Assembly: GCA_000388065.2 (NCBI GenBank)
Contig: KB932203.1
Direction: 5' to 3' (one strand)
Length of the DNA: 19,533 bases
Source: Fonticula alba ATCC 38817
Lineage: Eukaryota; Protista; Nucleariida
Shown here in pieces: positions 75 to 3,056 of the stretch (positions within the stretch are counted from its first letter, which is position 1; each line of letters opens with the position of its first letter). Made by a program: the position numbers and the translations under genes. The notes below the pieces were generated by a model, which was not told the origin of the DNA, searched no databases, and saw only the letters and a list, made by a program, of their open reading frames with translations.

Positions 75-3056
75 GAGGGCATATTGCCGAAGGGTTTCCA
101 TGCAGGTAATGTTGAGGAGGCCGGCGATCTCGAGATCCGGGAGGTGGTTCCTGGACAGGCGGCCCGGGGAAGGGTTAGGCCGAGAGTAGCAAGAGAAGAG
201 GGGCGGACGGGGGGCCGGGCACAGGGAGTCCAAAGATCGGGCAAACGCACCAGTCGGGAGCCAGACCCGGCGGCGCGGCCCGCCGAACCGGGGCCGCGGG
301 GGATGCCTTCGGGGCCGGGGCCGGGGCCGGGGCCGGGGCCGGGGCCGGGGCCGGGGCCGGGGCGGCAATGCGAGTCGGCGCTGGGCCAGAGGGGGACTTT
401 GACGCAGACGCGGCGGGCTGTGTGGAGGGGGCAGGGTGGCCGGGCTTCAGGGCCGGCTGCTGGGTTGTCCGTCCAGGCTGAGAGACCTGGGGGCGGCTGT
501 CCCGGACACCGCCCAGGCCGCCAACCTCCGCGAGGAGAGCCTCATCATCGGGGGCGGCAGCCGAGATGTCATCGAGATCCAAGTCCACAAGGCTACCGAC
601 GGCGGGCGAGCCATTCGTACGAGGACCCGGCGCAGGGCCCACAGGGGCCACAGACGCCATGGGCTTGGGGGCCGAGACCCCGACAGCCGGCGGCTTGGCA
701 CCGGGGGCGGAATCAAGGGCACCCAGTTGTGCCAGCAGGTCTTCATCTCCGGACCCGGCGTCGGAGATGTCCTCATAGTCCCGGTCCAGGATGCCGAGGT
801 CCAGAGGAAGGGCAGCAGGCATGGCGGGCCCGGCCGGGGCGGCGGACTGGGCCGACGTGATTGGCTGCGCCGGCGCGACGGGCTGAGCCGAGGCAGCGGG
901 CCGAGCGGGCCCGAGACCTGTCAGCTGCGCGAGCAGGTCCTCATCATCAGACCCGGCGTCCGAAATGTCCTCATAGTCCCGGTCCAGGATGCCGAGGTCC
1001 AGAGGAAGNNNNNNNNNNGGGGGGGGGGGCAAAAGGGCGCGTGCCCAGGGGCGCGTTTGGGCACACGCCCTGGCGGTGGGGTTTGTTTGTTGCTCGGGCT
1101 GGCGAGCCGGGGGCGTGAGCTCCACCGGAGGACGGGGCCACCGGGAGAGAAGTGGAGCCCGGCCCCGGCGCGAGGCTGGAACAGAGGGATACATGCCGGG
1201 CCGCCGGGCACCTCCCTGTGTGGCGCGGGCGCCGGAGCTCTGGAGGCTGGCGTGCGTTCGCGCGGGAGGCGCCCGCGCACGGGCGACGCCGATCCGCGCC
1301 CCGGACAAAAAGGGGGGAGGGAACACGTTCCCCAGGTCCTGGGGGAGGCCCGCCCGCCGGGCCGGCTCGACTGAGCGTCACTCGCCAATGGTCCGCAGCA
1401 GTGCTATATATTGGCGGATGAGCCACCGGGCCCCGGCGGCGGTCAGTCATCAGTCGGCCACCAGCGCGCCGGCCCCCCGCCGGCCGGGGCGGGCCGAAGT
1501 CCCCTCCCCGGCGAGGAGCCTCTCAGATGGAGGAGGCCCGACGTGCGCGCGGGAGGGGGGGGGGGGGGCATCTTTCCCCGTGTCCCTTCCCACCGGCGGG
1601 CTGCCTCGCCGGCCGGGCGCGCCCGTGACGCGGGGCCGGGCGGTGTGCAGCCCGCGCGACCGGATGGTGGGGGCCCCTCGCGCCGGAGGTGCTGGCAGGN
1701 NNNNNNNNNGCGGGCCGGACAGGCCCGAGGCCAGCCAACTGCGCGAGCAGGTCCTCATCATCGGATCCAGCGTCCGAAATGTCCTCATAGTTCCGGTCCA
1801 GGATGTTGAGATCCACCGGCAGGCTGGCCGGCTGGGCGCGGGCACCGGGGCCAGCGGGGCCAGCGGGCTGGGTCGCCGGGGCGGCAGGCCGGGCTGCCGG
1901 GGCGGCAGGTCGACCGGCAGCGCTGGCCCCCGGCCGGGCAGGGCCCGAGGCTTCAAGGGCGCCAAGCTGCGCCAGGAGATCGTCATCATCCGAGCCGGCA
2001 TCCGACATGTGATCGTCGTCATAATTCCGATCAAGCAGCGACAGATCAAGGGGCAGGCCAACGGCGGCCGGCTGTGGCACTGGGGCGGCCGCCGGCGGGC
2101 GCTGGGGCTGCGGCCTCGGCACGGGCCCCGGCGGCTGGCGCGGCGGCTGTGCGGGCTGCTGGACAGGCAGCCTGGGGGCGCTCGGGCGCGGGACAGCCGG
2201 GCCATCCAACGAGTCGAGCTGTGCCAGCAAATCCTCATCATCGGACCCGGCGTCCGAAATGTCGTCGTAATTCCGGTTCAGAAGGTCCACCTCGGTGGCC
2301 GGGGCAGGGACGCGGGCGGGGACGTGGGCCAAGCTCGAGGCTTGAGCAGGGGCGGCACCGGGGCCGGGCGCGCGGCCCGGGGCAGGAGCGCGGCCCGGGG
2401 CAGGAGCGCGGCCCGGGGCAGAGGGCCGCTTGGGCTCCAGGGCACCGAGCTGGGCGAGGAGGTCCTCATCGCCGGAGTCCGCGTCGGAGATGTCATCGTA
2501 GTTGCGATCGAGAAGCGAGGCCACGGGCATCGCACTGGTGGCAGCAGGTCGACTGGGCGTCGCCTGCGGCCGGGGGCCCGGCTTTTGACTGACAGTCAGG
2601 GCACCGAGTTCCGCCAGGAGGGACTCATCGTCGGAATCTGCATCGGAGATGTTGTCATAGTTCCGGCTCATGAGCCCCCCGGCAAGCGTGGCCGAGGGCG
2701 CCGGCCGGGCGCCGGGACCGGCGGCTGGGCGAGTGGCCGGGCGTGTGGCCGGGCGTGCGGGCGCCGCCGGCTTCGAGGGGGGCACCAGCGCATTGAGTTC
2801 GGCCAGCAGCGCCTCGTCGTCGAAATCCGCGTCGGAGATGTTGTCATAATTGGATGCCATCGGCATGGCCTGCGAAGCAGGCGCCCGAGCCGGCGCAGGG
2901 GGCTGGGCCTTCTATCGGTTCCCGGGAGGCGAGAGCGAGCATGTGTTAATTGGGGGTCTCGGTGGTGGGGGTGGGGGGGGGGAAGAATCCAGTAATGAGC
3001 GAGCGAGTAGGTGGTGGGGCCGGGGGAGACACATTTCTGCCGAAGAAGAAGGACAT
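75..3056 (-). CDS. Unknown protein with >=9 acidic YxxI-SD-acidic-LLxxLxxL repeats in a Pro/Ala-rich disordered backbone; 3' partial, interrupted by two assembly gaps
   Basis: The same peptide motif recurs in frame in ORFs 1523..2866(-) and 175..1326(-). Proposed exons in transcript order: tentative 3056-3033 (MSFFFGRN, weak donor GTGTCT); 2911 to the gap at 1710 (TAG acceptor at 2912, ATTAAC branch-like site; starts KAQPPAPARAPASQAMPMASNY); 1008-251 (ends LAPDW, donor GTGCGT at 250); 150-75 (CAG acceptor at 151-153, CTAAC branch at 174-178; NHLPDLEIAGLLNITCMETLRQYAL; donor GTATGT at 74). The status of 1019-1699 is unresolved. The gene continues beyond base 1. Confidence 0.85.
311..358 (+). 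repeat. (GGGGCC)8 perfect hexanucleotide repeat, encoding an Ala-Pro run on the minus-strand gene
   Basis: Read directly: 8 perfect units at 311-358 followed by GGGGC. It translates as APAPAPAPAPAPAPAP in ORF 175..1326(-). Confidence 0.97.
1372..1416. promoter_or_regulatory. Promoter-like motif cluster (TGAGCGTCA, CCAAT, TATATA, inverted CCAAT)
   Basis: TGAGCGTCA at 1372-1380, CCAAT at 1385-1389, TATATA at 1405-1410 and ATTGG at 1410-1414. CGCCAAT (1383-1389) and ATTGGCG (1410-1416) form a 7-bp inverted repeat. This is a motif match only, with no transcript evidence. Confidence 0.3.
2372..2421 (+). repeat. 18-nt coding tandem repeat (about 2.8 copies), encoding GRAPAP repeats on the minus strand
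   Basis: GCGGCCCGGGGCAGGAGC occurs at 2372 and 2390, with a partial copy at 2408. The protein reads APGRAPAPGRAPAPGRAP. Confidence 0.9.

What the first reader, a model, noticed from the sequence alone, without database searches (positions are those of the whole stretch)
514..2911. Undescribed multivalent motif-array protein: at least 9 acidic units, each stacking several trafficking-type short linear motifs
Seen in sequence: the consensus L[PV]xDLx[IL]LDR[ND]Y[DE]DISDA[GD]S[DG]DEDLLAQL[GA]AL is strongly conserved, while the ~30-55-aa Pro/Ala linkers diverge freely, so selection acts on the motif. From established motif grammar, each unit contains: a YxxI motif (YDDI, YEDI, YDNI), which fits both the AP-complex mu-subunit YxxPhi signal and an ATG8 LIR core; two CK2 consensus serines (SDxD/G and SDDE); an acidic-cluster dileucine (SDDEDLL) that closely matches the CI-M6PR GGA-binding signal DDSDEDLL and also fits [DE]xxxLL; and an amphipathic DxxLxxQLxxL helix with MIM1 leucine spacing but without the MIM1 Arg. 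The last unit has a clathrin-box-like LVDLD. Inference: a beads-on-a-string scaffold that binds many copies of one partner by avidity (clathrin adaptor/GGA, ATG8, an MIT/ESCRT protein, or a SPOC domain, since YEDISD resembles the SMRT YETLSD motif), possibly switched by CK2. I do not recognise this repeat as a named family. Short motifs match by chance, so the partner is undetermined.
Basis: partly seen in the sequence, partly recalled or inferred. Interest (0 to 1): 0.72.

Follow-up and report, generated by a model that had tools for sequence, protein, structure and literature searches.

The report
Orphan acidic helix-motif array protein
A transcribed, spliced gene of the amoeba-like fungal relative Fonticula alba starts with at least nine copies of a short, strongly conserved acidic peptide strung on floppy proline/alanine spacers; nothing like it was found in any database, and it probably acts as a many-armed docking strip for an unidentified partner.

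Summary
The minus strand of 514-2911 encodes nine copies of a 22-34-residue acidic unit, separated by 31-62-residue Pro/Ala/Arg linkers.

- **Selection:** synonymous sites between units are nearly saturated (pS 0.69) and non-synonymous sites are not (pN 0.19). The copies are therefore old and kept by selection on the protein.
- **Expression:** RNA-like contigs show a GT..AG intron at 151-250 and stop at the predicted exon 1 edge (3033). The gene is expressed and runs off the window start.
- **Gaps:** a 241-base contig in two RNA-like runs and one soil DNA run joins 1008 to 1710. The 680 bases between the two gaps are therefore probably a misplaced scaffold piece. The contig lengths imply 103 bridging bases, which would keep the frame.
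- **Relatives:** none in Pfam, PDB, 1.84 billion representative proteins, three word searches or JGI metagenomes.
- **Motifs:** only DxxLL and the acid-Leu helix spacing [DE]xxLxx[QE][LV]xxL are kept in 9/9 units. YxxΦ is kept in 7/9 and the clathrin box in 1/9. AlphaFold2 predicts a helix there at low confidence.

The best reading is a multivalent docking array of acidic amphipathic helices. The partner is unknown.

The parts
3033..3126 (-). Exon 1: 5' UTR plus a start codon at 3056-3054. It encodes 8 residues (M-S-F-F-F-G-R-N). The donor GT is at 3032-3031.
   Evidence: An RNA-like contig of X2 covers 3033-3126 and ends exactly at 3033. Sequence read. The splice to 2911 is inferred from frame and GT..AG; no joint was listed.
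2912..3032 (-). Intron 1 (121 bases, GT..AG).
   Evidence: RNA-like runs X2 and X3 have almost no depth here. DNA runs X6 and X8 run into it, to 2933 and 2957. An in-frame stop lies just upstream of 2911.
1710..2911 (-). Exon 2, first part: units 1-6 with their Pro/Ala/Arg linkers.
   Evidence: Open frame of 400 codons. RNA-like contigs tile 1710-2862 without differences.
2786..2887 (-). Unit 1
2597..2698 (-). Unit 2
2438..2539 (-). Unit 3
2207..2308 (-). Unit 4
1955..2056 (-). Unit 5. A two-residue insertion breaks the Tyr-x-x-Ile spacing.
   Evidence: Helix predicted over residues 24-35 of the folded piece.
1727..1828 (-). Unit 6
   Evidence: Helix predicted.
1009..1709 (.). Two 10-N gaps around a 680-base non-repeat piece. 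It is probably not part of this gene at this place.
   Evidence: The joint 1008 to 1710 is seen in X2, X3 and X6. RNA-like runs have no depth at 1054-1521, while DNA runs X6 and X8 hold the piece. No unit is encoded in any frame.
251..1008 (-). Exon 2, second part: units 7-9 and an 87-residue Pro/Ala-rich tail that includes an (Ala-Pro) run encoded by a GGGGCC repeat.
   Evidence: Open frame. RNA-like contigs cover 372-961. Hexamer repeat at 310-363.
913..1008 (-). Unit 7. Its first two residues are lost in the gap.
715..816 (-). Unit 8
   Evidence: Helix at residues 23-32, pLDDT about 70.
514..615 (-). Unit 9. It is diverged and holds the only clathrin-box-like L-V-D-L-D.
151..250 (-). Intron 2 (100 bases, GT..AG).
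   Evidence: A joint skipping 100 bases with CT..AC ends on the + strand, seen in X2 and X3 only and not in the DNA runs.
75..150 (-). Exon 3: 25 residues that start the non-repeat C-terminal part. The donor follows at 74, and the gene continues beyond the window start.
   Evidence: A 1471-base X3 contig covers 75-149 and continues for about 1300 bases outside the window. Loose ends at 75 in X2 and X3.

Best explanation
This is the N-terminal, intrinsically disordered half (at least about 650 residues) of a longer, expressed Fonticula alba protein. It carries at least nine equivalent docking sites.

**Anatomy of a site**
- A conserved extended stretch, Y-[DE]-[DN]-I-S-D-A.
- A short acidic spacer with a CK2-type serine.
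- An 11-12-residue acidic amphipathic helix, D-[ED]-x-L-L-A-[QE]-L-x-x-L.
- The leucines at i, i+1, i+4 and i+7, plus the invariant Asp at i-3, lie on one face of the helix.

**Proposed mechanism**
- I propose that this helix face inserts into the groove of a helical-bundle domain. Candidates are a MIT-type three-helix bundle or an LD-motif-binding four-helix bundle.
- I propose that the acidic residues pair with basic residues on the partner.
- The weakly basic Pro/Ala/Arg linkers (31-62 residues) would act as flexible spacers.
- Many copies, or an oligomer, of the partner would then be held by avidity.

**Shown:** the array, its selection, its transcription and splicing, and the absence of relatives.
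**Predicted at low confidence:** the helix.
**Inferred:** docking by the helix, the class of partner, and regulation by phosphorylation.
For: - **Units and invariant columns:**
- **Purifying selection:** pS 0.69 against pN 0.19 between copies.
- **Linker freedom:** a soil strain carries an in-frame 21-base deletion in a linker, and its contigs over the units show no differences.
- **Conserved patterns:** [DE]xxLxx[QE][LV]xxL and DxxLL are the only candidate patterns kept in 9/9 units.
- **Helix:** conservation extends seven residues past the dileucine. AlphaFold2 places a helix on this stretch in units 5, 6 and 8 and leaves the rest as coil, at pLDDT 55-73.
- **Charge:** unit cores carry -7 to -8, and the linkers between units 0 to +6.
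- **Expression:** spliced joint at 149/250, no RNA depth in intron 1, and a 1471-base transcript contig running on downstream.
[quoted passage not shown] LD motifs dock as amphipathic helices, with the leucines on a hydrophobic patch and the acidic residue on neighbouring basic charges (PMC7703752).
Against: - No partner was tested, and no binding domain of this organism could be examined.
- The helix is predicted only at low to moderate confidence.
- Its Eisenberg hydrophobic moment is low (0.12-0.18).
- The MIM1 arginine and terminal Lys/Arg are absent in all units.
- Pfam Snf7 (E 0.36) and DUF5427 (E 0.015) are both below threshold, and single units hit nothing.
- The C-terminal part, which would say what the array is attached to, lies off the window.
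Confidence: 0.45

Rival explanations
1. The units are acidic-cluster dileucine or tyrosine sorting signals read in extended form by clathrin adaptors (GGA or other VHS domains, AP complexes). The protein would be a multivalent adaptor hub or decoy, tuned by CK2 phosphorylation.
For: - The D, L and L of DxxLL are invariant in all nine units.
- [DE]xxxLL occurs in 7/9 units and YxxΦ in 7/9.
- A CK2-type S-D-D-E lies just upstream in 7/9 units.
- The pattern matches the acidic-cluster dileucine class reviewed in PMC13581114 (listed, not read).
Against: - The invariant A29 and L34 and the conserved L31 lie outside what a DxxLL signal needs.
- A helix is predicted where VHS ligands are extended.
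- The motifs are internal, in the N-terminal half of a protein that shows no membrane segment in the part seen. They are not near the C-terminus of a membrane cargo.
- Tyr spacing is broken in unit 5 and Tyr is absent in unit 9.
Confidence: 0.15
2. Each unit is an ATG8-interacting motif (Y-x-x-I core in an acidic context) with a C-terminal helix extension. The protein would be a multivalent autophagy receptor or scaffold.
For: - Y-[DE]-[DN]-I with acidic residues on both sides in 7/9 units.
- A helix a few residues downstream. That some extended LIRs carry such a helix is from my own knowledge.
Against: - The aromatic residue, the defining position of a LIR, is not invariant: it is Leu in unit 9.
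- Unit 5 has a two-residue insertion between Tyr and the hydrophobic residue.
- The best conserved columns are in the helix, not in the Y-x-x-I core.
Confidence: 0.07
3. There is no single structured partner. The alternation of blocks at -7 to -8 with weakly basic linkers would make a blocky polyampholyte. It would work by fuzzy acidic-hydrophobic contacts (like an acidic activation domain) or by driving condensates.
For: - Strict alternation of charge blocks.
- Disorder is predicted outside the short helices.
- No domain relatives were found.
Against: Fuzzy acidic domains tolerate sequence change. Here small residues (S18, A20, A29) and exact spacings are invariant across copies whose synonymous sites are saturated. 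That points to a stereospecific interface.
Confidence: 0.13
4. The array is an assembly or annotation artefact, or a non-coding repeat with an accidental open frame.
For: - Two gaps lie inside the feature.
- High G+C makes long chance ORFs common in this window.
- No database protein matches, not even a self-match.
Against: - The same sequence is found in five studies, including independent soil and sediment runs.
- RNA-like contigs are spliced.
- pN is far below pS.
- Both parts keep one frame.
Confidence: 0.02

Closest known systems
MIM1 helices at the C-termini of ESCRT-III proteins (CHMP1, CHMP2, IST1), ligands of MIT domains
   Same: An acidic residue three positions before the first of three leucines spaced i, i+4, i+7, in a short helix after a disordered stretch. 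The pattern [DE]xxLxx.LxxL is kept in 9/9 units. The only Pfam family touching this stretch is Snf7, at a non-significant E of 0.36. Binding mode from PMC4475061.
   Different: The central Arg and the closing Lys/Arg of the MIM1 consensus are absent in every unit. There are nine or more copies near an N-terminus instead of one at a C-terminus. The net charge is strongly negative. Resemblances to individual tails (CHMP2B, Vps60) and to the N-terminal motifs of CC2D1/Lgd are from my memory and were not tested.
Paxillin-family LD motif arrays (LDxLLxxL)
   Same: Several copies of an acidic leucine helix sit in a disordered, proline-rich N-terminal half, followed by a different C-terminal part. 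Positions +1 (acidic), +3, +4 and +7 (Leu) match in 9/9 units. Docking principle from PMC7703752.
   Different: Position 0, the first leucine that names the motif, is an invariant Asp. There are nine or more copies against four or five. No LIM domain is seen in the 35 residues known after the array.
Acidic-cluster dileucine signals of the DxxLL class (mannose 6-phosphate receptors, sortilin)
   Same: D-x-x-L-L with an upstream acidic cluster and a CK2-type serine. D, L and L are invariant.
   Different: The motifs are internal and repeated. A helix is predicted at low confidence, and conservation extends beyond the signal. No membrane cargo context is seen.
Other multivalent linear-motif arrays in disordered tails (for example the many LFa motifs of the WASH subunit FAM21, or DPF arrays of Eps15; from my own knowledge)
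   Same: The same design principle: many weak, equivalent peptide motifs on flexible spacers that give avidity.
   Different: The motif sequence is unrelated, the unit is longer (22-34 residues, with a helix), and no partner is known.

Membership tests
Pfam Snf7 (PF03357) | Score at or above the gathering threshold (27.3 bits) | tested here: not met
   10.9 bits, E 0.36, covering only unit 1 against profile positions 128-150. No hit for single units.
Pfam DUF5427 (PF10310) | Score at or above the gathering threshold (25.1 bits) | tested here: not met
   14.8 bits, E 0.015, unit 4 against profile positions 23-55 of 461.
MIM1 (MIT-interacting motif 1) | Acidic residue and three leucines spaced [DE]xxLxx.LxxL | tested here: met
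   9 of 9 units, against 0 expected in shuffles.
MIM1 (MIT-interacting motif 1) | Arg before the second leucine and Lys/Arg after the third | tested here: not met
   Gln or Glu at the Arg position in all units. Acidic, Gly, Val or Ser follows the last Leu.
MIM1 (MIT-interacting motif 1) | Binding to a MIT domain | not testable with these tools
   No complex prediction or binding assay was available.
LD motif (LDxLLxxL) | Leucine at position 0 | tested here: not met
   Invariant Asp (D24) at that position.
LD motif (LDxLLxxL) | Acidic residue at +1 and Leu at +3, +4 and +7, as an amphipathic helix | tested here: met
   E or D at +1 in 9/9 units, L-L in 9/9, L or V at +7 in 9/9. Helix predicted at low confidence.
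DxxLL sorting signal (VHS ligand) | D-x-x-L-L with an upstream acidic cluster | tested here: met
   9 of 9 units.
DxxLL sorting signal (VHS ligand) | Located in the cytosolic tail of a membrane cargo, near its C-terminus | tested here: not met
   Internal repeats in the N-terminal half. No hydrophobic segment in the roughly 690 residues seen.
LIR / AIM (ATG8-interacting motif) | [WFY]-x-x-[LIV] core kept | tested here: inconclusive
   7 of 9 units. Broken by an insertion in unit 5 and by Leu for Tyr in unit 9.
Clathrin box | L-Φ-x-Φ-[DE] | tested here: not met
   Only unit 9 matches, 1 of 9.

The most novel reading that the evidence does not exclude
The unit may be a multiplied copy, or a mimic, of the C-terminal tail of ESCRT-III subunits. 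That tail has an I-S-D stretch followed by an acidic leucine helix of the alpha5/MIM1 type.

- The protein would then be a clamp or sponge of nine or more arms for the MIT domains of Vps4/Vta1, or for open Snf7-type cores.
- It might be the Fonticula counterpart of the little-studied N-terminal motifs of Lgd/CC2D1.
- No natural protein with such a multi-MIM array is known to me.

The basis is thin: the helix spacing, a sub-threshold Pfam Snf7 match, and resemblances recalled from memory that I could not test.
Probability: 0.15. Interest if true: 0.75.

Novelty: new variant of a known kind. Interest (0 to 1): 0.45.

Why it matters
Arrays of short linear motifs are a recurrent way to build avidity scaffolds, but each new motif usually points to an unknown interaction. 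Several features make this one an unusually clean case:
- The copies are old and strongly selected.
- The gene is expressed.
- It appears to be absent from predicted protein sets, perhaps because the assembly gaps break the gene model.
- The organism sits at the base of the fungal lineage and keeps many animal-type signalling and adhesion genes.

Finding the partner would define a new peptide-domain pair. If the partner is a MIT or ESCRT-III protein, it would show a new way of regulating membrane scission machinery. If not, this remains a lineage-specific orphan of local interest.

Tried and rejected
**Searches for relatives, all blank**
- Pfam on both array pieces, on every unit, on exon 3 and on the tail.
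- PDB sequences with the long piece, the unit profile, two single units and exon 3.
- The word-index protein search at 385, 277 (region 205-253) and 115 residues.
- The exhaustive profile search of 1.84 billion representatives.
- Two scans of JGI metagenome contigs.
- The ESM Atlas, twice.
- Full-text searches for the peptide strings.
- Caveat: not even a self-match appeared, so these libraries seem not to hold this gene's product. Single-copy instances of a 12-residue motif in other proteins would not reach significance either.

**Attempts that failed**
- I tried to reach the C-terminal part of the protein, which lies off the window, through transcript-derived proteins.
- I considered guessing exact annotated products of neighbouring genes for an identity look-up. 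I dropped this because the neighbours are multi-exon.

- I did not type database sequences from memory into any tool, so the ESCRT-III, CC2D1 and paxillin resemblances stay untested leads.

**Readings rejected**
- Green-alga origin: the neighbours include a DH-PH RhoGEF.
- Recent duplication or gene conversion as the cause of the similarity: pS is 0.69.
- SH3-ligand enrichment in the linkers: counts are close to shuffles.
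Full report
**What is there**

The window is 69% G+C and has six assembly gaps. Translation of 2911 down to 1712, and of 1008 down to 253, gives open frames of 400 and 252 codons.

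These frames hold nine units. Their core reads roughly N-Y-D-D-I-S-D-A-G-S-D-D-E-D-L-L-A-Q-L-G-A-L. Units 5-8 also have a leading L-P-x-D-L-x-[IL]-L-D-R.
- tblastn of unit 8 against all six frames of the window finds these nine places and no others.
- Seven columns are invariant: S18, A20, D24, L27, L28, A29 and L34.
- Unit cores carry a net charge of -7 to -8.
- The stretches between 22-residue cores are 31-62 residues long, 35-52% Pro+Ala, and carry a net charge of 0 to +6.

**More than chance, and selected**

Between the 26-codon unit cores the mean proportion of synonymous differences is 0.69. The non-synonymous proportion is 0.19. The copies are therefore old, and the similarity is not due to recent duplication or conversion. 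It is kept at the protein level.

A soil-metagenome strain (X6) carries an in-frame 21-base deletion in the linker between units 5 and 6, and its contigs over the units show no differences. This fits free linkers and fixed units.

**Gene model and expression**

One read-laying run on four runs gave the following.
- *Intron 2.* Runs X2 and X3 are recorded only as "RNA?". They show a joint that skips 100 bases between 149 and 250, with CT..AC ends on the + strand. That is a GT..AG intron of a minus-strand gene. The DNA runs X6 and X8 lack this joint.
- *Intron 1.* X2 and X3 have almost no depth over 2926-3032, while X6 and X8 run into that stretch. One X2 contig covers 3033-3126 and ends exactly at 3033. 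There I had predicted the donor of a first exon with a start codon at 3056.
- *Downstream.* A 1471-base X3 contig covers 75-149 and continues for about 1300 bases outside the window. Loose ends at 75 mark the next donor.

The resulting model has these parts:
- exon 1, from at least 3126 down to 3033;
- intron 1, 3032-2912;
- exon 2, 2911-251;
- intron 2, 250-151;
- exon 3, 150-75.

The rest lies off the window. Intron 1 rests on depth, frame and splice signals only, because no joint was listed for it. The array is thus the N-terminal part of a longer protein. I saw only 25 residues of what follows (exon 3), plus ten more implied by a loose end.

**The gaps**

The 680 bases between the two 10-N gaps encode no unit. 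Several observations bear on their placement.
- RNA-like runs have no depth over 1054-1521. X6 and X8 do hold that piece.
- A 241-base contig, seen in X2, X3 and X6, lies with 90 bases on 1710-1799 and 48 bases on 961-1008.
- A 175-base X8 contig has 85 unplaced bases on the same side of 1710.

The piece is therefore probably misplaced by the scaffolder, and unit 6 is followed directly by a linker and a further unit.

The 48 bases are likely to sit at the contig end, because units 7 and 8 share an exact stretch of about 44 bases there (my count from the letters) and such contigs break at shared stretches. If so, 103 bases lie between the two sides. With the two bases at 1711-1710 that gives 35 codons, so the frame is kept and the linker is about 40 residues, within the range of the others. 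I did not see the bridging letters, so this is an inference.

Two further joints (813 to 908 and 845 to 908, with nine differing letters in one contig) show unit variants that the assembly lacks. Nine is therefore a minimum.

**Relatives**

I found none.
- Pfam gives only sub-threshold hits: DUF5427 at E 0.015 on unit 4 and Snf7 at E 0.36 on unit 1. Single units give nothing.
- PDB sequences give nothing meaningful.
- The unit profile against 1.84 billion representative proteins gave no hit at E up to 0.001.
- Three word-index searches at different lengths were blank.
- Two metagenome scans were blank.
- Two Atlas look-ups were blank.

No self-match appeared, so the gene's product seems absent from predicted protein sets. 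A gene model broken by the gaps is a likely reason. The blank result therefore cannot rule out relatives in poorly sampled kin, or single motif copies in known proteins.

Other agents' notes name the genome as Fonticula alba. I did not verify this.

Counting each pattern over the nine units:

| Pattern | Units kept |
|---|---|
| DxxLL | 9/9 (one extra chance match) |
| [DE]xxLxx[QE][LV]xxL | 9/9 (0 in shuffles) |
| YxxΦ | 7/9 |
| [DE]xxxL[LI] | 7/9 |
| [VIL]x[VIL][VIL] | 5/9 |
| Clathrin box | 1/9 |

- The Tyr is Leu in unit 9. Unit 5 has two extra residues between Tyr and the hydrophobic residue.
- The second serine (S-D-D-E, a good CK2 site) is present in 7/9 units.
- The invariant first serine has Gly at +3 in five units.
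- Conservation continues for seven residues after the dileucine.
- AlphaFold2 puts a helix on D-E-D-L-L-A-Q-L-G in units 5, 6 and 8 and coil elsewhere, at pLDDT 55-73.
- The hydrophobic moment on the Eisenberg scale is low (0.12-0.18). Even so, L27, L28, L31 and L34 and D24 fall within one face of a helix.

**How it most likely works**

I read each unit as a docking helix of the acid-plus-leucine type, with the I-S-D-A stretch as a second contact. The array would be a multivalent platform.

Two known systems work this way.
- MIM1 helices lie in the groove between helices 2 and 3 of MIT domains, typically with KD of 2-100 uM (PMC4475061).
- LD motifs lay their leucines on a hydrophobic patch of FAT-type and other bundles, with the acidic residue on neighbouring basic charges (PMC7703752).

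The unit fits the spacing of both, but it fails one defining feature of each. It has no MIM1 arginine or closing basic residue. It has an invariant Asp where the LD motif has its first leucine. I therefore file it under neither.

From memory, the unit also resembles the tails of some ESCRT-III proteins, and exon 3 resembles parts of CC2D1/Lgd. No tool supported this, so it is only a lead.

The rival readings are given with their odds in the rival section: adaptor sorting signals, a LIR array, fuzzy acidic or condensate behaviour, and artefact.

**Verdict**

This is a real, expressed, selected and so far unmatched motif array. It is a new variant of a known design, the multivalent linear-motif scaffold. 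The partner and the attached C-terminal domain are both unknown. Interest is moderate. It would rise sharply if the partner proves to be part of the ESCRT/Vps4 machinery.

Noticed in passing
window 1019-1699: The 680-base piece between the two gaps holds CCAAT and TATATAT elements and a G run. RNA-like contigs match only its right end (from 1607) and then continue into unrelated sequence. It looks like a promoter or first-exon region of another locus placed here by the scaffolder.
   Followed up: partly
window 310-363: A perfect (GGGGCC)9 hexanucleotide repeat on the + strand encodes an Ala-Pro run in the tail of exon 2. Read-derived contigs break here.
   Followed up: no
window 1846-1896: The soil-metagenome run X6 lacks 21 bases at about 1875, an in-frame loss of 7 residues in the linker between units 5 and 6, next to a 9-base tandem repeat. 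This is linker length polymorphism between strains.
   Followed up: partly
window 781-908: Contigs of X2, X3 and X8 join 813 or 845 to 908 and carry G>A at 811 and 815 plus other differences. These are further unit or linker variants that the assembly does not show, so the true array is probably longer than nine units or differs between alleles.
   Followed up: partly
window 3441 to about 6800, minus strand: The upstream neighbour on the same strand is a long Ala/Gly/Pro-rich coding region with coding-type codon-position G+C. It ends at the stop at 3441-3443 and has no Pfam match. A (CT)n-rich intron-like stretch lies near 3610-3686.
   Followed up: partly
window 3139-3331: The intergenic region just upstream of exon 1 holds an (AG)14 microsatellite and homopolymer runs of about 27 C and 31 G. 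Contigs of all runs break here.
   Followed up: no
window 10813-13452, + strand: A second long coding-like frame (880 codons, intron-like interruptions, one gap) has no Pfam match. Its identity is unknown.
   Followed up: partly
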